Notes: generated by a model not told the origin, from the sequence alone. Positions 1 to 26,741 are shown, counted from the first letter of the stretch. The stretch is 64,000 nt of DNA from Mizuhopecten yessoensis (GCF_002113885.1 NW_018405595.1:1187123-1251122); one strand, 5' to 3'. Numbers and translations: made by a program.

Positions 1-639
1 GTATTGCAACAACTATTTTATTGCATTAAGCATTGTACACACAGTTATAAAAGCGTCTGAAGTGGAGCTATGTGCAACAAAATTGAATTTTGGAATGAAC
101 CAACACCTAGGCACTTTATTTGGCAGAAATATTTTATTGATGATCTGTAAAATGAGACAAAGTAGAAAACTGCAAAAAACATCTTAGCAAGAAGGTTCAA
201 GAAATAATTCACCAATGTGGGTAACATTATGGTGACTTTAATTCGTGTAATGAATACAAACCTGTTATATTGCTAACCTCTTTAAATTGTCGTGTTTGTG
301 TATTTGTCATTAAACTGTTGTCACGATGTAGAAGAAAATCAAATATGATCAATTGGCTACGAGTTTTCGATATTTTTACATTTCGATAATTCCTAGACAA
401 CAAATCACAATAACACAGTTCAGTTTGTTAATTTTAACAAGTTTTACTGCTTTTTACTGAACGCATACATATTTAACATATCAAAGCATTATGATTGGAC
501 GCAAGCTATATTCTATATTTAAAACCACTTCCACAAACATTTTCATTACATACAATTAACAGCACGGCCTTACGGGTACTGTATTAATGTGGGTTTTTTA
601 AGGAGAAAAGAGGAAACAACGAAGAAAAAAAGAGAATTG

Positions 640-927
640 ACCCCCTGAGTGCTGATAAGAGACCGTGTGGACAGTTAAATTACTCACACCGAGAGAACAC
701 CAAAGAGAGGAAGAAGAAACAAGAGAATCCCATGTCAATGAACTTCAATATTTATTTTACTATATATTCTCCCGGTAAGAGTAAACCGACTGCCCTCACA
801 GCAACTTATCACATGACCTTATAATATAACCTTAAAATGTACTTATGAACTTCAATAAATATATTGGTGTTCTCTCGGTGTGAGTAATTTAACTGTCCAC
901 ACGGTCTCTTATCAGCACTCAGGGGGT
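640..927. repeat. 64-bp perfect inverted repeat (640-703 / 864-927) with a 160-bp spacer
   Basis: ACCCCCTGAGTGCTGATAAGAG...GAGAGAACACCAA at 640-703 is the exact reverse complement of 864-927. Confidence 0.95.
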
Positions 928-930
928 ATA

Positions 931-1526
931 TGTAGGTAGGTTTCTGTATAGAATTATTCTCTGCTCTGTATATTTGGCACAAATATTGTACCAGGGCTCA
1001 TGTACTAGATTACACGAGGTTATGTCACTATTTGAGGAACTACATGTACAGCAATGTCTTGTCATTAGAGAAATCAGTTGTCTATCAAGAAACAGGAGGA
1101 AACCACAGGATTCTCTGTTTTGTTTCTTTGTAATGATTTTCACTGCAATAACGCTTCGTCTTCTCTGTCCTCAAATATCTTTTCCAAGATTTTCAAGATT
1201 TATTTATTCACTCTCGACACAAAAGGTATTTTACAAGAGGTCAACATCTTAATACATTTTAATAACATGACAATGTGAGTACAGATTGTTTTAAATGTAA
1301 AACGTAGATATATACTGCTACATTATAATATAACTGTCATAACTTGTTCTGCTATATTATCGAATGTCACTTAGAGCCTTAATTGTTTTCTCTAGAAAAA
1401 GCAGGAGTATTACAGCATGATGTACACCATTGTTAACTGTTTAGTGCTGAAAATGAAAAGAGTTCATGAGGTGACGAAAGGTCCACTATAAGGCGCGGTT
1501 TTCCTTAATATTTACCGTACGCTACA
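931..1526. mobile_element. Candidate LTR (about 596 bp)
   Basis: TGTAG...CTACA termini, preceded by purine-rich AGGGGGTATA, and it abuts the broken 3' end of the gag ORF. No TSD and no partner LTR found. Confidence 0.3.
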
Positions 1527-1541
1527 CCTATAGGGCTAACT

Positions 1542-2483
1542 CTATCTGACGAGAAAGGCAAATGTAGCCATGTACAGAGATTTATTTAACCACTGGTCCT
1601 CATTGTCACCGAGATTTATGTAAATACCCCTCCGTATCTGTTCTTCTGAACGTTCGGTGTCATATTTTGGTTTGAGGAGGGATGCCAAATTAACGTACCT
1701 GCCTTCAAATATTTTTTTCCTGCTAGTATCTGACACTATGTCTAGATGCGGTAAGCTTTCTGAAACTTAACCTTGTGTAGTGTACCCACATTGTGTAGTC
1801 CTAGTCACGGTATGGTCCGGTCTTCTCAATGCATCGTAAGCTGTTGAGAGGGTGTATTCCGGCTCCTGAATAGGCGTCGTTGTTTCCCGTCGTCCGTCTC
1901 TTGTTCCTGTGAGAGACATCACCGTCTGTTGAAGACCGAGGACGGTTTGCTGCATACTATGCATAGATGCCAAGACCCCATGAATCACAGAGGAGTCCTG
2001 TTGTGTGGACGCCGCCATGTTTGCACTGCTGTTAACAACTTCCTCTGGAATGTGCTCCGCGGAGTTATATGCTGTATCACTACGCCGCGTAGACTGTGTG
2101 ACTTGCGCGAGTTTTGATGCGTTTCGACTGGATGAAAGCCCCTCCGCGTCAGAATGTAGTTCCCCTGTTCCGACGGAAAGTTGACTACGAAAATCGCCAT
2201 TTCGATCAGTGTCCATGTTTTCGCGATCTGGTAGCGTAGCAGAGTCGGAAAGAATGTTACTTACGGTTTCATTTACTGCAGTAATTAGAGTTTGTCGTCT
2301 CGCGCTGTGTCCCGCGTTTTCGAGGTACATGGCCTTTAAACCCGCTTTCGTAATTCCAGTTGATGGCGCGATTATCCCAATTCGAGCTTACTGTTCTCGT
2401 AACTGAGTTATCGTCCAATTTGCTGGGTTTGTTGAGTCCCAAGGTGTATTTCTATTTGTGGATCTTGGTCGACGACTAGCCAT
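1542..2483 (-). pseudogene. Decayed gag-like ORF1 of a tyrosine-recombinase retrotransposon (DIRS/Ngaro type)
   Basis: One frame runs from ATG 2483 through ORFs 1767..2330 and 1542..1736 with two in-frame stops. It has an N-terminal helix-extension-helix-like motif (PANWTITQLREQ*ARIGI...KAGLKAMYLEN) and SESLPHLDIVSDTSRKKIFEGRYVNLASLL...DQWLNKSL, which I recognise from invertebrate DIRS/Ngaro ORF1 proteins. 3' truncated. Confidence 0.65.
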
Positions 2484-3117
2484 GGTCCCGCGATCGAGAG
2501 GTCGCTACAAGTTGAGGGGATACTAGTCTGATCGTCACTCGATCATATTGTTCTCGTAGGCCTACCCCCTGGACGAAATGCGTCCCTACAATACACGAGT
2601 AGGTATTTAGTTCTTATGTGCTCTTGCTTAGACGTTGTTGTTTCTTCACGGGTCCGCTTATTTTCACAGAAATTAAGTAATTGTTTCAATGTTGACACTT
2701 CAAAATGGTCCCACGTAGAAACGCAATTTACGTTCACACATGATTCACATCCACCTGTAGCTGGTAATATATTCCCAAATGATTGTAGTTGAAACAACAA
2801 TAGTCCGTATTAATTTATATGCGTCTTTCTGCTATAGAGCCTGTGAAAACAATGACCAACTATGCCCCAACCAATCAGAATGCTCTAAAGCGGTTGATCT
2901 ATATTTAGGATTGCCTAACACTACATATCATATTACATGTTTACCTTACACTATATATGATCACATCGTTACCTAATAAACATAAAAATTCTTATGTTAT
3001 ATAAATAGTCCAAAAGTTCTATACAGTGTACTCCCTAAATAATTCTTTCAAATTATGATTTGTAGTCAGTTTAAAACTATTTGTTCATTTAAACCTGGCT
3101 TATTTACATAAGCCTCA

Positions 3118-4856
3118 ACTAACACTATCCATGATACTTGGAAAGGCTATCCCTGCCACATACACCCCCTCAAGGATTCATGACGTCCCGGTATTTAACC
3201 AGATACTGTAATAGAAAACAATGGCATTAGTGATTACATATATGATAAATTCATCCAGGGTTGCTCGACAAAAACATCTAATAGAGAATTGGTGATTCTA
3301 TCAAATGTTGTTGTACTAATCACTCTACCACTACTAATCAACCTCTCCAGAAATGCAGCCTTCTGCTTCCATTCTGGCTCAACAATTTGCTGGGCCATGG
3401 CATACTCATTGGACCTTATCCACGCTGGAGGCTGGCGATTCCTTCTTGGCCTTGCAGAAACTTCTGGAGTGTCTCATATTTCCGAGGAATCTAGGTTAGT
3501 TTCCCTATCACTGACCGTCATCAGCTAACCCAGATTCCTCCTCCTCGACAACATCCTCAGGGTCGTCACCACAAGTCTGCTGTGAGGGTTGATGTTCCGG
3601 TACCGGTTTATGTCCGCTCTCCTCCCTCGCTACTGAGGACCTCTCACCCGCGAGAGGTTCCCGAACGGGAGGGATTACTTCCACTCTGCTATATTCCTCA
3701 TCCTCATCTGTATAATCAGAAACATGATCATCAACTTCTGTGGTAGTCTACTCTACTGTCTCAGATGTCTGCCTTTTTCTTGGTCTGGGTCTTGGTTTGG
3801 GTTTGGGTCTCTCCTTAGGTGTGTGTATCGGGAGATATCCTATGGGAAGCAAATGATTCCTATGCAGTGTTCTCTGACGACCATCAGCTTCACTCTCTAC
3901 CACAAACACGGGATTATCCATGTTTGGCTGCAAGATGACTTGGTAACTCCCATTCTCCCACCTATCGGAGATCTTGTGTTTCCCATCAAATGCTAGTTTG
4001 CGTACAAGTACTCGATCCCCTTCCTCAATGGATGCTCCTCTAGTTTTCAGGTCATAAGAATCCTTTTGACGATTTTGTGTCTTACGCGAAGCTGCTGCAG
4101 CTGCCTTATAAGACCACTTAGGTTTAACCTTAAGGTTCTTCACATATTTAGTCATGGGAACACAGACACTAGCTTCCTCTCTTTCTAGGTCAAAACCCAC
4201 ATCTATGGGCAACCTTGGGTCCCCCCATACATTGTTGCCCATTGGATGATATGGCGACGTTCTGGAATTTTTTTTATCCCTGCTATTCCACATAAATCAG
4301 TTATGACATTGCCTACGAAATTCGCGCCCTGGTCAGAATGAAGTCTCCTTGGAAATCCGAAGTGGAACATGTAAGTTCTGAAAAGATCATCAGCAGTAGT
4401 TTTCGCGGTTTGGTTCTTTGTGGGAAATGCCTGGGCATATCGTGATAACCAATACGTGCTGGTACCCTCCAACTGATGTCTCCTATGTCAGATAGTCCAT
4501 ACATACCAGTTCCATAGGTTGTCGTGATGTTATGCTGACCATGGGAGCTCTGTTCACTGGTGTTTCTCTCCGTAAACATCTTGGACAACCCTTAACCCAC
4601 TCTTCTATGTGGGTAAGCATGTTCGGCCAGTAGAACCTATCCCTGACTAGGCTGACGGTTCGATCCCTTCCAGGATGTCCAACGTCCATGAGGAACTCCT
4701 GGAGTAACCGCTCTCGGTATTCACTTGGAAGGACAAGTTGTCTTCGCTGCTTTCCCTCCACAGTCATTACCCGGTGCAACACTCCTCGATGGAACTCAAG
4801 GTTGGCAAAGTTCTTTGATAAAGCTGCGTTGTCTGGTGTATGCGGAATATCCCTCC
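3118..4856 (-). mobile_element. Gypsy LTR retrotransposon A: decayed integrase, PPT and start of the 3' LTR
   Basis: Frameshifted fragments include the Zn-binding region (GHPGRDRT...RFYWPNM...CPRC), the core (LHSDQGANF, TSPYHPMGN) and the C-terminus (TLHRNHLLP). PPT GAGGGGGTGTA (about 3161-3171) lies directly before TGTGGCAGGGAT (LTR start at 3160). The distal LTR end could not be located. Confidence 0.9.
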
Positions 4857-19593: not shown

Positions 19594-19618
19594 GCGATTG
19601 TCATGTATGACGTCACAG
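19594..19618 (-). promoter_or_regulatory. Right subterminal repeat with CRE palindrome, upstream of the KolX ATG
   Basis: The minus strand reads CTGTGACGTCATACATGACAATCGC, mirroring 11453-11477. Confidence 0.55.
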
Positions 19619-19816
19619 CATTTTCGAATTCAAGAACGATAACTCATGCTTGATTTTCACTTGCGATTTCGGTAGAACCTTATATCATTTCACCATTTTA
19701 AAATAATCTACACACCTGTGACGTTTGTAAGGTGTAAAAGCATTAAATTGTATAACCAGGGAACGTTATAATTGTGGAAATACACAAAAACAAACCAGCC
19801 TTTCGTTTACCTTTAA

Positions 19817-20195
19817 GTGCTGATTTACCCTCACCTGGCCCCGGTTTCCTGCGTGCACACTGGTCACACTTCCTACACCACTGTTTGATTGACTCGGTAA
19901 GTCCTTGCAAGAAAAACCTTCGCTTCACGGAAGCAATAGTTTTGTCCCTACCGAGGTGGCCAGAAGTGTGTCCATTGTGTAGCTGGTTCATTCTATCATT
20001 TCTCAAGCAGTATGGTGTGATAATCCGTTGAGTTATATCCCTTGTATCAGTGTCTACATCTGACAAGTACAGAATATCATTGCCCCCTATGCTTATCTTT
20101 TCCCAAAGTTGTACATACACTCTAACTTCATAGGGAAGTGTACTTATTTCTGCCCTAGATGGTTTGTGCGTACATTTTTCTTTCAATAAGATAAA
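19817..20195 (-). pseudogene. Gypsy element B, integrase HHCC zinc-binding segment isolated between two insertions
   Basis: LHNGHTSGHLGRDKT...RRFF...WCRKCDQCARRK. Confidence 0.92.
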
Positions 20196-23100
20196 GGGCA
20201 TGCTTCCAGTAATGTTAATTCTCCATAGGAGCCTGCCCCCGTATAATTTCTTATCTAGCTCAACTACTGTTTTTTTTCTTTTCCGGAGAATAATTTTACA
20301 CCTTTCCGACACCCAGATTTCATAATTTCAGTGAAAATGTATTTTTATAAAGTTGTCAATTTCAGCATCAAAGACATAAGTTCGTAAATAAAAGAAGGTT
20401 ATCTCGAAATTGTAATTCGCAACATAGTATAAATTTCTTTTGATAAATATTTCCAAAACATCGTGTTTATTCATAAAACATAAAAAAAAATATTCTCGGA
20501 TGAAAATGCACTTGCAGAGACACAATTATGAAGAAAAATGCCATAAAATTGCAATTTTCTCCCGTTATATAGTTTTGGATGCAAATTTCCATCAGAAAAT
20601 CGGATAGAGCTTTACTTGTTTCATATGTGTACCAAAAATCAGCTAATTCCATGTGGTGGAACGTTCTCATATCGCCGCCTGAATGTGGTTGTAAATTGAA
20701 AGAAAAGGGGAAATGAGTAACAACCTTGTCTGAAACCCTATTATATAGCTTATTATATACAAACTTTTATATTGAATATCAGAGCGGATATTTTCATGAC
20801 AGTTTTATGATGTGTAACGACTAAATAAACAGTATCGATATAAAGATTTACACTGAGGACACCCTGATACATGAATACTGTTCTATCTCAAGTTGTCCTC
20901 TTCTGAATTTTCTGATCGTGTGGCCTTGTACATTTATCCGTATCTTCTTGTCTTTGTCTATACGTTTACGGAATCATTGACTCGACGCTAGCTATTCTTG
21001 TCTCACTTTCCTTGTTTTATTGTCCCATCTCCAAAGCGTTGTGGCTCTGTCAGGGTTGGGACCCTGACTTGTCTCACTTTCTTTGTGCCTGCCGACCACG
21101 CCACATCGAATAGATAGATTATCCATATGAAATACTTTATTTTGTTCTAAGTAATCAATCAATTCTGCGCTTCTTGGAGGTATTGAATGTGATTTATTAT
21201 ATTGTCTTGTTATTTTGTGTAATTAGTTGTTCGTTATTTATCACACATTTTCGCATAATTGTACCAAACTACTAAGTATTAGCTGTTTACAGCAATCATC
21301 GGTGGCTTGCTATTTTGTTACTTTATCGACGCTTCATAAACCAATCGTTATTGTTTCAAGATGGAGGGTAAATGTGTTGGAGAAGGGTGTCAAGTATACT
21401 TCAAGAAACGTAGTGGCAATAAGAACAGAAGTGCACGCAATGTAAATAGTCCACAATATAAATGGCTCCTAGATACGCTGGTGCAACAAGGATTGATGTC
21501 AGCAAAGGAACAAGCACTTATTTGCCAGAAGTGCTACATGAAGTATCTTCGGAACAAAAATCAGCCTGAACCTGAACCCGAGCAGAACCAGGAAATAGAG
21601 GAAGAAGACGACTCCCCGTCCCATATCCTGCCGTTGCTGACCCTTCATGATCTTTTGAATGGATCATCTTCACACAAAAAATGCTGTCTCTGTCTTGTTA
21701 CCTTTGCAAGAAATGGAACAAAATCATCAGTCTTACCAAAACGTGCAAGACATCACCTGATCTATTCACACAAACTGTGGTGTCCCACCTCATCCCGCGT
21801 CTGCTCCATTCACCTTATTGGTAACGACTTAGATCCGTCTACAGAGGTTGTCCTTGATGGTAGAGGTTCCTTGGAATCTCAGTTACCATCAAAATCGTCC
21901 GAAATCATTAATGACCTCCTAGAGGTGTCGCACGTCCTTTCACAGAACCAGTCTGCGTTTACAATAAGCTTTTCTTCTCTTGATGACTCGGCATGCATGG
22001 CCTGGACAGGTTGGTCCAAAGATCAGTTCCTCGAAATCCACTCGCACTGTTCCCCATATCTTTCATCTGGTATATATACCAAGACTACACACGATGCTCT
22101 ATTACTGTTCTGGGTAAAACTGAAAACCGACATTTCCTGGAGTCAGTGTTCTTCTCTTTTTGGAATTTCCAAGTCAAGTGTGTCCAAAACTTTCCACTCC
22201 ATAGTACAGGCATTAGACACATCGATAGTCCCACAATTTCTAGGTCCGGATCACTTGACAAGAGAACAGTTGCTCGGGCACAATACTGTCTTTTCAGAAG
22301 CATTTTTTGGAGATAAAGCCACTGCCATATTAGATGGCACCTATATTTATATCCAGAAAAGCTCCGACCACAAGCTCCAGAGAATGTCCTACTGTGGCCA
22401 GAAGAAGAGAAACTATCTCAAATTCATGAGCATCGCCTTACCAGATGGCTACATTCTGGACACAGTAGGACCATTCACTGGCAGCGAAAATGATGCTACA
22501 ATTACAAAAAAAGTCATGGACAAGCTAGTTACTTGGCTACAACCAGACGACAACGTTGTCGTTGACCGAGGTTTTAGAGATGTCCTACCAGTTCTCGAAG
22601 CCTCTGGCCTCAATGCTAGCATGCCGTCATACCTGAAACCCGGTCAAAGTCAACATTCTGACGTCCAAGCAAATCTTGACAGAACTATCACCAAATCGAG
22701 GTGGATTGTGGAATCCTATCATGGTCGTCTGAAACACTGGACGTTCTTCCGAACGCAATTGGTGTCTAACAGCTTTATCAATGTCATCGAGGCTTTGCTT
22801 CGAACCGTCACAGCCTGTCTGAATGGTATTAGAGGACCGATCTACCAGAGATCTCCAGAGAGAGATGCCAAAGATAGGCTAATGGCTGAACGTATGAAGG
22901 ACCGTTTGACAACACCGAATGGTTTAGCTCAGAGAGTCAAGACAGATCCGGATCTATCTAGACGGGCAAGGTCCGAGTTTGTCAAGATGGATGCATCTTC
23001 CGTACTGTTTCCCCGTCTCGATCTTGATTACTTGAGAACCATTACGTGTGGAACGTATCAGATATCTCTGGCTCCTGGTTACATCGCCGAACATTTAAGT

Positions 23101-24268
23101 GATGACGGAGACTATGAGGTGTGGCTTTACCAGCACTCCCCAGACCTTCTCCGATGTCAAATACATTCTCGACACAAAAGCCAAACGAAATATAACGTTT
23201 GGATACGGTTCACCGTTTCACCCGATGTTGAGGCCCCAATAAAGGACTACTACTGCCAGTGCCCAGTTGGAGAGAGAACGATGGGAATGTGTGCGCACAT
23301 CTCCAGTATCTTGTACTACCTTGGGTATTACAGGACGCTGGAAAACCCTCGACCATTACAACCACAGGTAAAGAAATTCCGACAAAACTTGAAATAGTTT
23401 TCCATGCGGCAACGGAGTGCATATGTCGAAAGTATGTTTGGGGCTCGATATGAAAGATCCCCGTTACCATGTGACTAACCAAACTTATAAATATAGGTAT
23501 TATACAATCGCCCGTAGCTATGAACACTCCCGTAAATGCGAAAACCAACCAAAATCATAAGGAACACGTTTTGTTTGTTGTTCTGTCTATTTGTCAGCCA
23601 ATGTCTTCAACCACGGGGACTTGTGAAGTAGCCATCTTGGATTTTTTTTATGAAAAAGTGTTTCTCTCACTTTTTTTCATATCTGTGTACATATTCTCAA
23701 CATACCGAGCAAATACTCTCGTTTTTTTGTTAATTATCTAAAGAAAGTCGAAAATCGGCAATTCAACCATAGGCTAATTCAACCCAACATTTGAAAATGT
23801 TCCACCACTTACATTTTGATGATTTTTCCTCTCATCAATAGCATATTACGTACTGTTTAATAGGATAAAAATTGGTTTGCATCCAACGCCCATAAAAGGG
23901 TGTATTCTCTAAAAAACACAGTTTTTGTGTCTAAAATGTTATCATCGAAAATGGCATTTTTGAGATTGTTTCTTCCATAAAACAGCCAAATGGCGCGATG
24001 GAAACATGATTTTTTGTCACAATCATGCCATGAATGTATTCTTTACGGTGACCATCATTTGATTAGATTTTCATTAATATTTTACATAACATGCACATTT
24101 TATCAACACTTAGACAGCTTCTGAAAGGTACAAATTTGAGGAGCCATAAAAAACAAACCAAGTGACCTAAATCTTTATACTTTATAGATTTGTGACCAGA
24201 ACGGCATGGGCAATGCACCACCAACAGGAAATTTGAATCAGAGAAGGGGCCGTTTTGGAAACCGGCCC
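20196..24268 (+). mobile_element. PHIS-superfamily (PIF/Harbinger-ISL2EU-Spy) DNA transposon, 4073 bp, no TSD
   Basis: Flanks read AAA|GGGC...GCCC|TTT. Imperfect TIR GGGCATGCTTCCA vs GGGCCGGTTTCCA (10/13). Removing it restores the Gypsy frame HVSK|FILLKEK. Confidence 0.85.
21361..23397 (+). CDS. Transposase, 678 aa: N-terminal Zn modules, HTH, Harbinger/ISL2EU-like DDE, C-terminal SWIM finger
   Basis: Intact single-exon ORF. HTH: LLLFWVKLKTDISWSQCSSLFGISKSSVSKTF. DDE: ILDGTY...VVDRGF...RWIVESYHGRLK. SWIM: YCQCPVGERTMGMCAH. Confidence 0.92.
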   Translation: MEGKCVGEGCQVYFKKRSGNKNRSARNVNSPQYKWLLDTLVQQGLMSAKEQALICQKCYMKYLRNKNQPEPEPEQNQEIEEEDDSPSHILPLLTLHDLLNGSSSHKKCCLCLVTFARNGTKSSVLPKRARHHLIYSHKLWCPTSSRVCSIHLIGNDLDPSTEVVLDGRGSLESQLPSKSSEIINDLLEVSHVLSQNQSAFTISFSSLDDSACMAWTGWSKDQFLEIHSHCSPYLSSGIYTKTTHDALLLFWVKLKTDISWSQCSSLFGISKSSVSKTFHSIVQALDTSIVPQFLGPDHLTREQLLGHNTVFSEAFFGDKATAILDGTYIYIQKSSDHKLQRMSYCGQKKRNYLKFMSIALPDGYILDTVGPFTGSENDATITKKVMDKLVTWLQPDDNVVVDRGFRDVLPVLEASGLNASMPSYLKPGQSQHSDVQANLDRTITKSRWIVESYHGRLKHWTFFRTQLVSNSFINVIEALLRTVTACLNGIRGPIYQRSPERDAKDRLMAERMKDRLTTPNGLAQRVKTDPDLSRRARSEFVKMDASSVLFPRLDLDYLRTITCGTYQISLAPGYIAEHLSDDGDYEVWLYQHSPDLLRCQIHSRHKSQTKYNVWIRFTVSPDVEAPIKDYYCQCPVGERTMGMCAHISSILYYLGYYRTLENPRPLQPQVKKFRQNLK

Positions 24269-26741
24269 TTTGGATACATGCTCATCTTAACCCTGTAATG
24301 ACTTGATTTTCTCCTCCCCCCAGGATTCTACCCTGTTACTAAATGAATCATCTGAAGATGAGTCACAGAGTGGATTCACCCCAACAGACGTCGATTCATC
24401 TTCATGTGTGTATTCCAAACCAAACTCAGACTCAGGACCCCCCATTTCCTGTTTACAATCTTGACAATCCGGCCTTTTACATGGTCTGGTAGGGACTCTG
24501 GACAACCCATCTGCATTACCATACAGTTCCCCTGGACGGTGTACATTTCAACAATGCTTAACCATCTTGCCAACATTCCCGCAGGATCACTAAAAAATTT
24601 GAACCAAATCAAGAAAGCATGATCTGTCCTGACAGTAAATTTCTGGCCTAATAAAAAAAGTTTGAAATGCCGTAAAAAAGAGTTCTCTGTGGGTTGTACA
24701 GTAATTCTGTTGAGCTTTGTTTAATGTTTTACTAGCGTACGCTATAATGTGTTCTTCCCCATCCTGTACCTGGGATAGCCCAGCTCCCATACCAGAGTTG
24801 CTTGCATCAGTATCAATAATAAATGGGTTGTTTAAGTCTGGATAACTAAGGATTGGGCTGCATGTGAGTAAATCTTTCAGCTCATTAAAAGACTGCTCGC
24901 AGCATTTTGACCACTTAAAAGTTTTGTTTTTTCTTGTCAACTTTATCAAAGGCGCAGTCACTATAGAAAAATTGGGAATAAAACGTCTGTAATACCCTGC
25001 CATGCCTAAACAACTTTTAATTTCCGAAACATTGGTTGGTGAATGCCAATCCAGCACAGCCTTGACCTTAGCAGGATCACAGCTAATCCCAGCTTCCGAT
25101 ACAACATGTCCTAAGTACGAAACTTGGGTCTGAAATAGTTGACACTTCTTAGGTTTTAATTTTAACCCAGCCTCACGTAAGCACTGAAAACAGTCCTAAG
25201 ATTCTTTAATGCCTGATTGAAATTTTTTCCGAACACTATTACATCATCCAAGTAACAGAGACATTTAGACCAGACAATCCCTCCTTTAAAGACGATGGAC
25301 ATAACCCTTGAGAATGTTGCGGGTGCATTTGTTAAGCCAAAGGGCATAACAGTAAACTGGTAGAGACCCTTATGTGTAGAAAATGCTGTTTTAGCCTTGT
25401 CATCTTCACTCATTCCAACTTGCCAGTACCCGCTAGCCAGATCTAGGGTTGAAAACCACTTCGCCCCATGTAACATATCTAGTGTGTCATCAATAAGTGG
25501 CAGAGGATAAGCGTCCTTTTTGGTCACCGCATTAAGTTGACGGTAGTCTACACAAAAACGAATAGCCCCACATTTCTTGGTCACCAAAACAACTGGAGCA
25601 GACCAAGGTCTATTGCTGGGTTCAATCAACCTACTTTCCAACATTTTATCAAGCTCATCCTCAAGCACTTTTTTCGACGCGCTGGTATTTTTATTGGCTC
25701 TGCCTGACCTGTATCTATATGGTGTTCTCCCAAGTCTGTACGGCCCAACTTCCCATCAGGTCCTGCAAAAATATCCTGATATTCCACAAGTAACTGTCTC
25801 ACTTCTGTTTTTTCATTCTCCCTCAACTGAACTGATAACCCCTCTGATAATGGTTCTAATTCATTACTCTCTATCTCTGCTTCATCAACCTGGTATACAT
25901 GTTCTACACTTTCCACTGTAGCTATGTGGGTGTTCTCCTGTAACTTGACAGGTCGCGATGAAAGGTTAAGGACCGACAAGGTTATTTGTTTACCTTTCCT
26001 CGGTCGAACCAACATCCTTGCCAGTAACAACCCTTCACTACTAAACTTCTCAACAGGTTCCACTATTCCCTCCTCACCCGATATATTGCCATCTATGTAA
26101 CCAGGAAAATAACATTCCGTGTTTTCAGGAATGGAGATTGGTTCACTGACCCGTATCCTAGCACAAGTACTGGCGGTGGCCACTACAGGTTGCAAATCAC
26201 ACCTATATTTGCCTAACCTGAGGACTTTTTCTCCAAAGCTTATCTCCCCTTGATGCTTTGTAAGAAAATCAACACCTATGATTCCTCTTAGTCCCTCCAA
26301 CTTAGCCACCACCACTTCCTGTGCAAAATCTGGATCTCCAATCCTAAAATCACAAATGCACTTCCCGTACACCTTCAAATTGTTACCAGATGCAGTTGTT
26401 AACCTTAAATTGCACCTCTGCAACTGGGGCCTATTCTGTGCTGGCATTTGATCATACACATCTGTGGTAACTAGGGTGACTGTTGAACCTGAATCTATAA
26501 GATATCTTGAGGTAACAATGCATACCGAGGAATCTAAATATAAACTAGGTTGTACTGCATTTAACGTAACTACCGGCCCATCTTTATGAAAAGTATCAGA
26601 TTCTGGGGCTGTACTTTTGGGCCCAAGCCCAGCCGTTAAAAGTTTTCCTGACACTGACGACCTTCCTCTCCCCCATTTGTTTTGGTTTTCGGACAATTGT
26701 AGGACAGCTGTCCCTTTTCTCCACACCCATAGCATGGCCAA
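24269..26741 (-). pseudogene. Gypsy element B: gag zinc-knuckle tail, protease, RT, RNase H (decayed, 5' truncated)
   Basis: Knuckle CYGCGEKGQLSYNC; protease LIDSGS and IIGVDFL; RT PWSAPVVLV, FCVDYRQLN, LDLASGYWQ, MPFGL, YLDD; RNase H DTDAS, IAYASKTL, NYCTTHREL. Domain order PR-RT-RH-INT. Confidence 0.95.
26604..26648 (-). other. Probable -1 ribosomal frameshift signal at the gag-pol junction
   Basis: G_GAA_AAC lies just before the gag stop (QENF*) and pol is in the -1 frame. After a 7-nt spacer comes the stem-loop GGCT-GGGC-TTGG-GCCC-AAAAGTAC-AGCC. Confidence 0.6.

What the first reader, a model, noticed from the sequence alone, without database searches (positions are those of the whole stretch)
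20193..24271. TSD-less AAA|TTT insertion (Spy-type) by an element with a Harbinger/ISL2EU-like, SWIM-fused single transposase
Seen: the element GGGC...GCCC sits between AAA and TTT with no duplicated bases, and the empty site reads in frame as Gypsy ...TCC AAA TTT ATC. Established: blunt insertion into AAA|TTT defines Spy transposons, whereas PIF/Harbinger make 3-bp TSDs with a Myb/SANT partner and ISL2EU make 2-bp TSDs with a YqaJ partner. Here the motifs (DGTY, DRGF, RxxVE) look Harbinger/ISL2EU-like and I see no partner gene. Inference: possibly a distinct, poorly described PHIS lineage with blunt, potentially scarless integration.
Basis: partly seen in the sequence, partly recalled or inferred. 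Interest (0 to 1): 0.75.

Follow-up and report, generated by a model that had tools for sequence, protein, structure and literature searches.

The report
Young Spy transposon in a scallop
This is an intact, very recently multiplied copy of a Spy jumping gene, a kind known since 2014 for inserting between AAA and TTT without duplicating any host bases.

Summary
A 4,073-bp element (window 20196-24268) sits between AAA and TTT inside a decayed Gypsy-type retrotransposon. Uninterrupted paralogous Gypsy copies read ...GATAAA|TTTGGA..., so nothing was duplicated. All 30 other copies I fetched have the same AAA/TTT flanks and no duplication.

The element has 13-bp inverted ends and one 678-aa gene with HTH, DDE and a C-terminal CxCx9CxH (SWIM-type) finger. 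There is no partner gene.

The interpretation as a possibly distinct lineage is not supported. The protein falls with full support in one clade with ant, moth, oyster, mussel and rotifer proteins. That clade has the host range, size and DDE spacing published for Spy. It is separate from ISL2EU-like THAP transposases. Four related families at 29-56% identity also end AAA|GG...CC|TTT. The SWIM finger occurs in nearly all full-length relatives, so it is not a special fusion.

New here:
- a scallop family of roughly 500 near-identical, intact copies;
- ZAD-like and THAP-like N-terminal fingers that the Spy papers do not mention;
- a 99.3% identical copy in a king-scallop metagenome.

Its deep position within Spy is unresolved. 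The scan reported this family twice before, on other copies in this genome (s1-545917, s1-514807).

The parts
20193..20195 (.). Host AAA, left half of the AAATTT target
   Evidence: AAA in 30/30 copies. Paralogous empty site L033 reads AAATTT uninterrupted.
20196..24268 (+). Whole Spy-type element, 4,073 bp (family consensus 4,072 bp)
   Evidence: 36 scored genomic matches, 34 spanning 1-4073 at about 100% identity; mean of 2.1 differences between copies.
20196..20208 (+). Left terminal inverted repeat. This copy reads GGGCATGCTTCCA; the family consensus is GGGCCTGTTTCCA.
   Evidence: 29 of 30 copies carry the consensus. This copy has substitutions at element positions 5 and 8.
20634..20672 (.). 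Left arm of a subterminal inverted repeat, 438 bp from the left end
   Evidence: pair I1: 39 nt, 77% complementary; local score 21, against a shuffle mean of 13.6 and maximum of 19. The arms lie at mirror positions.
21361..23397 (+). Single transposase gene, 678 aa, intact
   Evidence: All 30 copies keep the 678-aa ORF. M1 is invariant in 55 homologues.
21361..21558 (+). N-terminal C4 zinc module (C5, C10, C55, C58), ZAD-like fold
   Evidence: the six top structural matches are all ZAD domains (Z 5.5 to 3.2, 54-75 residues aligned). C55 and C58 are nearly invariant.
21673..21813 (+). C108-x2-C111-x36-C148-x2-H151 module, THAP-like (weak evidence)
   Evidence: conserved Cys and His; profile hit to the P-element THAP domain 3kde_C, E 0.076; 3kde_C Z 2.9 and THAP1 Z 2.2. 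Pfam THAP was not detected.
22087..22224 (+). HTH_Tnp_4 DNA-binding domain (aa 243-288)
   Evidence: PF13613, E 3.4e-7.
22321..22830 (+). DDE catalytic core (aa 321-490) with D325, D402, E451, giving D(76)D(48)E
   Evidence: PF13359, E 1.9e-17.; the fold's nearest solved structure is Tn5 transposase. All three residues are invariant in 55 homologues.
23239..23322 (+). C-terminal SWIM-type zinc finger (C632, C634, C644, H646)
   Evidence: PF04434, E 0.05, below the cut-off. CxCxxGxRxxGxCxH in nearly all full-length homologues; 16 of 55 homologues hit SWIM, best E 3.5e-4; strands followed by a helix, as in SWIM.
23789..23827 (.). Right arm of the subterminal inverted repeat, 441 bp from the right end
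24256..24268 (+). Right terminal inverted repeat, TGGAAACCGGCCC (reverse complement GGGCCGGTTTCCA)
   Evidence: 27 of 30 copies are identical in the last 12 bases shown (GGAAACCGGCCC).
24269..24271 (.). Host TTT, right half of the target
19596..20195 (-). Host Gypsy-type retrotransposon, integrase side (decayed)
   Evidence: Integrase_H2C2, E 5e-17.
24269..25668 (-). Host Gypsy-type retrotransposon, RT and RNase H side (decayed, with stop codons)
   Evidence: RVT_1 E 1.3e-26, RT_RNaseH_2 E 3.1e-27.

Best explanation
The element is an autonomous cut-and-paste DNA transposon of the Spy group (PHIS superfamily). It belongs to a very young, high-copy family in a scallop genome.

Its single 678-aa transposase carries:
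- two N-terminal zinc modules, one ZAD-like and one THAP-like;
- an HTH_Tnp_4 DNA-binding domain;
- an RNase-H-fold DDE core;
- a C-terminal SWIM-type finger.

The transposase presumably binds the 13-bp terminal inverted repeats (GGGCCKGTTTCCA), excises the element, and joins both 3' ends to phosphates directly opposite each other at the centre of the palindrome AAA|TTT. With no stagger there is no gap to fill, so no target-site duplication forms.

Shown here: the target, the absence of duplication, the anatomy, the copy number and near-identity, and the family placement.
Inferred: the blunt strand transfer, current activity, and the roles of the zinc modules.

The window copy is the most diverged of 30 copies. 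It has two substitutions inside its left end, so it may move less well than its siblings.
For: Target and lack of TSD: 30/30 copies have AAA|...|TTT, and paralogous empty sites are uninterrupted.

Youth and abundance: 30/30 copies have an intact ORF, differ by a mean of 2.1 bases in 4,073, and show no differences in the ORF. There are about 497 first-look candidates for the 3' end and 496 for an internal piece, and all 80 scored matches are 99-100% identical.

Family placement:
- Of the 104 homologues, all 102 strong ones that carry a name come from bivalves, ants, moths and rotifers, the published Spy host range. The two weak hits are a chimeric scallop gene model and an ISL2EU-like THAP protein at only E 2e-8.
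- The Spy-like clade is separated from THAP transposases with support 100.
- The ant and moth members have D(80)D(48)E and D(79)D(48)E, matching the published D(79-80)D(44-62)E (PMC4122938).
- Cyphomyrmex costatus and Lasius niger are listed with single Spy elements of 690 and 686 aa. My hit from C. costatus is 686 aa.
- Related families L040, L042, L069 and L093 end cleanly at AAA|GG...CC|TTT. Two of them start GGACCACG and GGAGGTAG, fitting the published GGANNNNG.

Published experiment: cgSpy made 8,810 insertions in human cells, about 60% at AAWTT, without TSDs (PMC11304231).
Against: - No curated Spy reference sequences were available. The 'Spy' identity of the ant, moth and oyster homologues rests on species, length, DDE spacing and end structure.
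- The TIR start GGGCCTGT departs from GGANNNNG at positions 3 and 8.
- The first DDE spacer is 76 residues, not 79-80.
- In the 33-row trees the window's subclade is sister to all other Spy rows (support 84-87). In the 79-row tree it is nested (support 98). Its depth within Spy is therefore unresolved.
Confidence: 0.9

Rival explanations
1. It is a separate PHIS lineage, not Spy, that evolved blunt AAA|TTT insertion on its own or kept it from a common ancestor.
For: The TIR start GGGCCTGT is not GGANNNNG, and the spacing is D(76)D, not D(79-80)D. In the reduced trees its subclade branches first among the Spy-like rows.
Against: The protein shares one fully supported clade, the same five-part architecture and the same SWIM motif with the ant, moth and oyster proteins. 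Identity is 27-37% over the full length, at E 1e-50 to 1e-120. DDE spacing across that clade runs continuously from 76 to 84. The sister-to-the-rest branch has only 84-87 support, and the larger data set contradicts it (support 98). Even a basal position would still be Spy by the published definition: target, single ORF, and a clade sister to ISL2EU.
Confidence: 0.07
2. AAA and TTT are the outermost bases of the element's inverted repeats, not host sequence, so the true insertion site and any duplication lie further out.
For: AAA and TTT are reverse complements of each other, so they would extend the inverted repeat.
Against: Five paralogous copies of the host retrotransposon without the element retain AAATTT or GAATTT at the exact site. 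The bases outside AAA/TTT show no repeat in any of the 30 copies.
Confidence: 0.01
3. It is an ISL2EU or PIF/Harbinger element whose short duplication happens to be hidden by the A/T-rich target.
For: Pfam sees only the generic DDE_Tnp_4 and HTH_Tnp_4 domains that all PHIS groups share. Repbase once filed oyster Spy elements as ISL2EU (PMC4122938).
Against: A 2-bp AT or 3-bp TWA duplication would leave AAATATTT-like or longer empty-versus-filled differences, and none is seen. There is no YqaJ or Myb/SANT ORF. ISL2EU-like proteins align only over HTH plus DDE and end directly after the DDE domain, lacking the 180-aa SWIM-bearing tail. The clades are separate.
Confidence: 0.01

Closest known systems
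Spy transposons (Han et al. 2014, PMC4122938; Diaby et al. 2024, PMC11304231), including the active cvSpy of Crassostrea virginica and cgSpy of Colletes gigas
   Same: Precise insertion between AAA and TTT without duplication. A single ORF of about 700 aa with an N-terminal DNA-binding part, HTH and DDE. Short TIRs starting GG, as in other molluscan Spy. Length within the published 1,165-5,910 bp. Invertebrate host. Very low copy divergence, as in the active families.
   Different: The TIR begins GGGCCTGT, not GGANNNNG. The first DDE spacer is 76 residues, not 79-80. It is only about 33-36% identical to the oyster, mussel and Argopecten proteins. It belongs to a subclade with unnamed bivalve-assembly proteins (47-57% identity), plus rotifer proteins. 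Copy number, about 500 full-length copies, is far above the 1-37 intact copies listed for most species. The 2024 survey lists only fragments (284 and 372 aa, no TIRs) for two scallops. The Spy papers describe no zinc fingers; here three are conserved.
ISL2EU transposons (PHIS; reported sister group of Spy)
   Same: Homologous HTH plus DDE region (hhalign E 4.8e-35 over residues 205-499). TIRs start GG. A/T palindromic target (A|AT|T). ISL2EU has an N-terminal THAP, and this protein has a weakly THAP-like C2CH module at the matching place.
   Different: ISL2EU makes a 2-bp AT duplication and carries a second YqaJ-exonuclease gene. Its transposase ends right after the DDE domain, with no SWIM tail.
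PIF/Harbinger transposons
   Same: DDE_Tnp_4 and HTH_Tnp_4 domains, and an A/T-rich palindromic target.
   Different: A 3-bp TWA duplication and a second Myb/SANT gene. No SWIM tail.
MULE/MuDR-type transposases and FAR1/FHY3, the classical carriers of a C-terminal SWIM finger
   Same: A CxCxnCxH finger placed C-terminal to a DDE core.
   Different: An unrelated DDE family (Mutator) that makes 8-11-bp duplications. The shared SWIM position is analogy or domain shuffling, not family membership.

Membership tests
Spy (PHIS superfamily) | Insertion exactly between AAA and TTT with no target-site duplication | tested here: met
   30/30 copies. Paralogous empty sites are uninterrupted.
Spy (PHIS superfamily) | One long ORF only, with no accessory gene | tested here: met
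   678-aa ORF. No ORF outside the transposase gene exceeds 73 aa.
Spy (PHIS superfamily) | Transposase with N-terminal HTH and a PHIS-type DDE core | tested here: met
   PF13613 E 3.4e-7 and PF13359 E 1.9e-17. RNase-H-like fold, nearest solved structure Tn5.
Spy (PHIS superfamily) | Transposase groups with Spy transposases, apart from ISL2EU and Harbinger | tested here: met
   Clade support 100 against 25 ISL2EU-like rows. Caveat: Spy references were identified by species, length, DDE spacing and AAA/TTT ends, not taken from a curated set. Harbinger, Pangu and Nuwa references were not available.
Spy (PHIS superfamily) | DDE spacing D(79-80)D(44-62)E (a published shared characteristic) | tested here: inconclusive
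   Here D(76)D(48)E. The second spacer fits and the first is 3 residues short. The clade ranges from 76 to 84, with ant at 80 and moth at 79.
Spy (PHIS superfamily) | TIR terminal consensus GGANNNNG (described as 'relatively well conserved', so not a criterion) | tested here: inconclusive
   GG is kept, but positions 3 and 8 differ (GGGCCTGT / GGGCCGGT). Relative L040 has GGTGCTGT. L042 and L069 fit the consensus.
ISL2EU | 2-bp AT duplication at A|AT|T | tested here: not met
   No duplicated bases.
ISL2EU | Second ORF with a YqaJ exonuclease domain | tested here: not met
   No second ORF.
ISL2EU | N-terminal THAP domain in the transposase | tested here: inconclusive
   The C-x2-C-x36-C-x2-H spacing fits THAP. 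3kde_C gives profile E 0.076 and Z 2.9. Pfam THAP was not detected in 55 homologues, and hhalign did not align the N-termini.
PIF/Harbinger | 3-bp TWA duplication | tested here: not met
PIF/Harbinger | Second ORF with a Myb/SANT domain | tested here: not met
SWIM zinc finger (PF04434) | CxCxnCxH signature on strands followed by a helix | tested here: met
   C632, C634, C644 and H646 are invariant in 55 homologues. The model shows strands 588-632 and then helix 645-659.
SWIM zinc finger (PF04434) | Score above Pfam's gathering threshold | tested here: not met
   13.6 bits against a cut-off of 19.6. 16 of 55 homologues reach E<=0.1, best 3.5e-4. UniRef labels two relatives 'SWIM-type domain-containing'.

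The most novel reading that the evidence does not exclude
This family may represent a deep, so far uncatalogued Spy sub-lineage, made up of a bivalve subclade plus rotifer relatives. It would have its own end motif (GGKNCTGTT), a shorter DDE spacer and a conserved ZAD-like / THAP-like / SWIM zinc-finger set. It may be mobile now, given about 500 identical autonomous copies. It may also have crossed recently between distantly related scallops, given the 99.3% identical copy in king-scallop material.
Probability: 0.3. Interest if true: 0.45.

Novelty: new member of a known kind. Interest (0 to 1): 0.3.

Why it matters
The main value is correct filing. TSD-less AAA|TTT insertion was described in 2014 and shown experimentally in 2024, so it needs no new lineage.

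The family is still a useful specimen:
- It has hundreds of identical, intact, autonomous copies with short ends. It is therefore a strong candidate for a naturally active molluscan Spy, next to cvSpy, for footprint and target-choice experiments.
- Its conserved zinc modules, which the Spy papers do not describe, give concrete residues to mutate when asking how a DDE enzyme achieves a zero-stagger attack.
- The near-identical copy in another scallop is a lead for horizontal transposon transfer in bivalves.

Tried and rejected
I could not read the genomic ends of the named ant, moth and oyster homologues, so I used metagenome contigs instead.
There is no RNA evidence and no insertion-polymorphism evidence, and read laying was not used.
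Other DDE_Tnp_4 families of this genome (Harbinger, Nuwa and Pangu candidates) could not be fetched as local outgroups.
- The supplements of the Spy papers hold no protein sequences, so there was no direct comparison with curated Spy references.
- The AU test on the 79-row tree did not finish in three tries. Reduced trees gave a different, weakly supported deep order. I therefore report the depth within Spy as unresolved.
- A first TIR scan timed out, and a second was swamped by low-complexity matches. The GG-anchored scan with boundary inspection worked. In L043 and L082 the inverted repeat extends past the assumed end, so I do not count them.
- Foldseek on the N-terminal model gave nothing significant. 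Foldseek on the whole model matched only the DDE core, so the SWIM fold has no structural match behind it.
- A degenerate long TIR was rejected. Global similarity between the two 700-bp ends is weak (z 2.9), and only one 39-nt mirror pair stands out.
Full report
**What is there.** The element spans window 20196-24268 (4,073 bp, + strand). It begins GGGCATGCTTCC and ends GGAAACCGGCCC, with host AAA (20193-20195) on the left and host TTT (24269-24271) on the right. It interrupts the pol region of a Gypsy-type retrotransposon on the minus strand: RT and RNase H lie to the right and the integrase H2C2 finger to the left. This retrotransposon copy is already decayed, with several stops, one of them six codons upstream of the site.

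**Is the insertion really without duplication?** I searched the window's own genome (988 Mb, 82,659 contigs) with the 250 bases left of the element. This found five paralogous copies of the retrotransposon that run straight through the site. One reads GATAAA|TTTGGA and four read GATGAA|TTTGGA. AAA and TTT are therefore host bases, not the tips of the element, and nothing was duplicated or deleted.

A search with the whole element gave 36 scored matches at about 100% identity, 34 of them over positions 1-4073. In all 30 fetched copies the element lies between AAA and TTT, while the neighbouring positions vary. With six fixed bases in 30 independent sites, chance is not an issue.

**The family.**
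- All 30 copies keep the 678-aa ORF. They differ by a mean of 2.1 bases in 4,073, and every difference lies outside the ORF.
- The family's ends are GGGCCTGTTTCCA on the left and GGGCCGGTTTCCA (reverse complement) on the right, a 13-bp inverted repeat with one mismatch.
- The window copy is the most diverged of the 30, with six differences. Two of them are inside its left end.
- A 200-base query from the 3' end gave 497 first-look candidates, and one from inside the DDE region gave 496. All 80 scored matches are 99-100% identical.
- The family therefore has roughly 500 copies, nearly all full length, with few or no deletion derivatives. At least about 90 distinct places were scored.
- A 39-nt inverted pair lies at mirror positions, 438 and 441 bp from the two ends.

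**The protein.** Pfam finds HTH_Tnp_4 (residues 243-288), DDE_Tnp_4 (324-486) and, below threshold, SWIM (627-654). The catalytic residues are D325, D402 and E451. No ORF outside the transposase gene exceeds 73 aa, so there is no Myb/SANT or YqaJ partner.
- An AlphaFold model built on 55 homologues is confident (pLDDT 90.2). Its nearest solved fold is Tn5 transposase, followed by piggyBac and retroviral integrases.
- The alignment shows invariant C632, C634, C644 and H646. A scan of all hits shows CxCxxGxRxxGxCxH in nearly every full-length relative, including those from ants and moths.
- The SWIM-type finger is therefore a trait of the whole clade. It is not a fusion peculiar to this element.
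- A profile-profile comparison with 29 ISL2EU-like THAP transposases aligns only residues 205-499 (E 4.8e-35). Those proteins stop right after the DDE domain, so the 180-residue SWIM-bearing tail separates this clade from ISL2EU.
- At the N-terminus, residues 2-81 (C5, C10, C55, C58) match ZAD domains. All six top structural hits are ZADs (Z 5.5 to 3.2).
- Residues 105-161 (C108-x2-C111-x36-C148-x2-H151) weakly match THAP domains: 3kde_C at Z 2.9, plus a profile E of 0.076. The THAP reading is a lead, not a result. Pfam THAP is not detected in any of the 55 homologues.
- None of the three Spy/PHIS papers contains the word SWIM. The 2014 paper states that most Spy transposases appear to have no zinc finger.

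**Which family?** Spy is defined by four traits: insertion between AAA and TTT without duplication, a single ORF, an HTH plus DDE transposase, and a transposase clade sister to ISL2EU (PMC4122938). The first three are met directly. For the fourth, the evidence is as follows.
- The word-index protein search returned 104 relatives. Among the 102 strong ones, every named protein comes from bivalves, ants, moths or rotifers, which is the published Spy host range. The two weak hits are a chimeric scallop gene model and an ISL2EU-like THAP protein at only E 2e-8.
- Table S1 of the 2024 survey lists Cyphomyrmex costatus and Lasius niger with single Spy elements of 690 and 686 aa and AAA/TTT flanks. 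My C. costatus hit is 686 aa.
- The ant and moth proteins have D(80)D(48)E and D(79)D(48)E, the published Spy spacing. Across the clade the first spacer runs from 76 to 84, and the window protein sits at 76.
- Eighty metagenome contigs encode relatives. Four families, at 56%, 37%, 29% and 31% identity, show clean boundaries AAA|GG...CC|TTT. Two of them start GGACCACG and GGAGGTAG, which fit the published GGANNNNG.
- In maximum-likelihood trees the Spy-like rows form one clade against 25 ISL2EU-like rows, with support 100.

**Position within Spy.** Inside the Spy-like clade the window protein belongs to a 12-row group of unnamed proteins, several of them on megabase-scale contigs. One of these is mislabelled as coming from a lucinid-clam symbiont MAG. 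The next relatives are rotifer proteins. In the 79-row tree this group joins the ant and bivalve clade with support 98, leaving the moth clade outside. In 33-row trees it is sister to all other Spy rows with support 84-87. The deep order is unresolved, and the AU test did not finish.

**Mechanism.** The published experiment with cgSpy in human cells recovered 8,810 insertions, about 60% at AAWTT, without duplications (PMC11304231). By homology, this element most likely integrates in the same way. A two-fold symmetric transpososome attacks the two strands at directly opposite phosphates in the centre of the palindrome AAA|TTT. That gives a zero stagger, compared with 2 bp in ISL2EU and 3 bp in Harbinger. 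This step is inferred, not shown here. A dimerising role for the ZAD-like module and a DNA-binding role for the THAP-like and SWIM modules are speculation.

**Organism and earlier notes.** From memory, the assembly size and contig number match the Mizuhopecten yessoensis assembly, but I could not verify that. If it is right, the 2024 survey lists only a 284-aa fragment without TIRs for that species, so this intact family seems uncatalogued there. The scan reported the same family twice before on other copies, with the same verdict.

**Side result.** Contig NSIT01000223.1 (L039) comes from a shotgun assembly of king scallop (Pecten maximus) gill tissue (PMC5772249). It carries a copy that is 99.27% identical over element positions 99-4073. 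Its ORF is intact and differs by 11 nucleotides and 6 amino acids. Fragments of at least 90% protein identity are annotated in Ylistrum balloti. This points to recent horizontal spread among scallops. Host-gene divergence was not measured.

Noticed in passing
L039:1704-5679 (contig NSIT01000223.1): A shotgun assembly of king scallop (Pecten maximus) gill tissue carries a copy that is 99.27% identical to this element over positions 99-4073. Its 678-aa ORF is intact, with 6 amino-acid differences. Fragments of at least 90% protein identity are annotated in Ylistrum balloti. This suggests recent horizontal transfer among scallops.
   Followed up: partly
window 20196-20208: The window copy has two substitutions (element positions 5 and 8) inside its left terminal repeat, where 29 of 30 copies carry GGGCCTGTTTCC. 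It is also the most diverged copy overall, so it may be impaired for mobility.
   Followed up: partly
window 20634-20672 and 23789-23827: A 39-nt inverted pair (30/39 complementary) lies at mirror positions, 438 and 441 bp from the two ends. It scores above all 200 shuffles. It may be an internal transposase-binding site or a relic of longer TIRs.
   Followed up: partly
window 21361-21558 (protein residues 1-66): The N-terminal C4 module of the transposase resembles the ZAD dimerisation domain of insect zinc-finger proteins; the six top structural hits are all ZADs (Z 5.5-3.2). The Spy papers I read do not mention it.
   Followed up: partly
L001-L030, element positions 286, 296 and 300: Among 30 copies the recurrent variants cluster here: T>A at 286 in 10 copies, T>A at 296 in 9 copies, C>T at 300 in 2 copies. 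They border an A-run and are mutually exclusive. They are either sub-family markers or homopolymer-edge sequencing errors. No copy differs inside the ORF.
   Followed up: no
L032-L036 (paralogous Gypsy copies): Four of five uninterrupted paralogues read GAATTT at the site, and only one reads AAATTT. The element sits in a copy that carries AAATTT, consistent with a strict need for AAA.
   Followed up: no
P0243 (cluster of P0004), P0054: One protein in this animal transposase clade is deposited as 'MAG: transposase family protein [Candidatus Thiodiazotropha sp.]'. This is probably host (lucinid clam) DNA binned into a symbiont genome. A Lasius niger member is misnamed 'vacuolar protein sorting-associated protein 13c'.
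   Followed up: no
L040:1013-4834 and L041: The same king-scallop assembly holds two further Spy families at 56-59% protein identity. L040 is complete: 3,822 bp, ends GGTGCTGTTGCAG, flanked by AAA/TTT. It shares the GGNNCTGTT end motif with the window family.
   Followed up: partly
The region is a nest of mobile elements.
   Followed up: no
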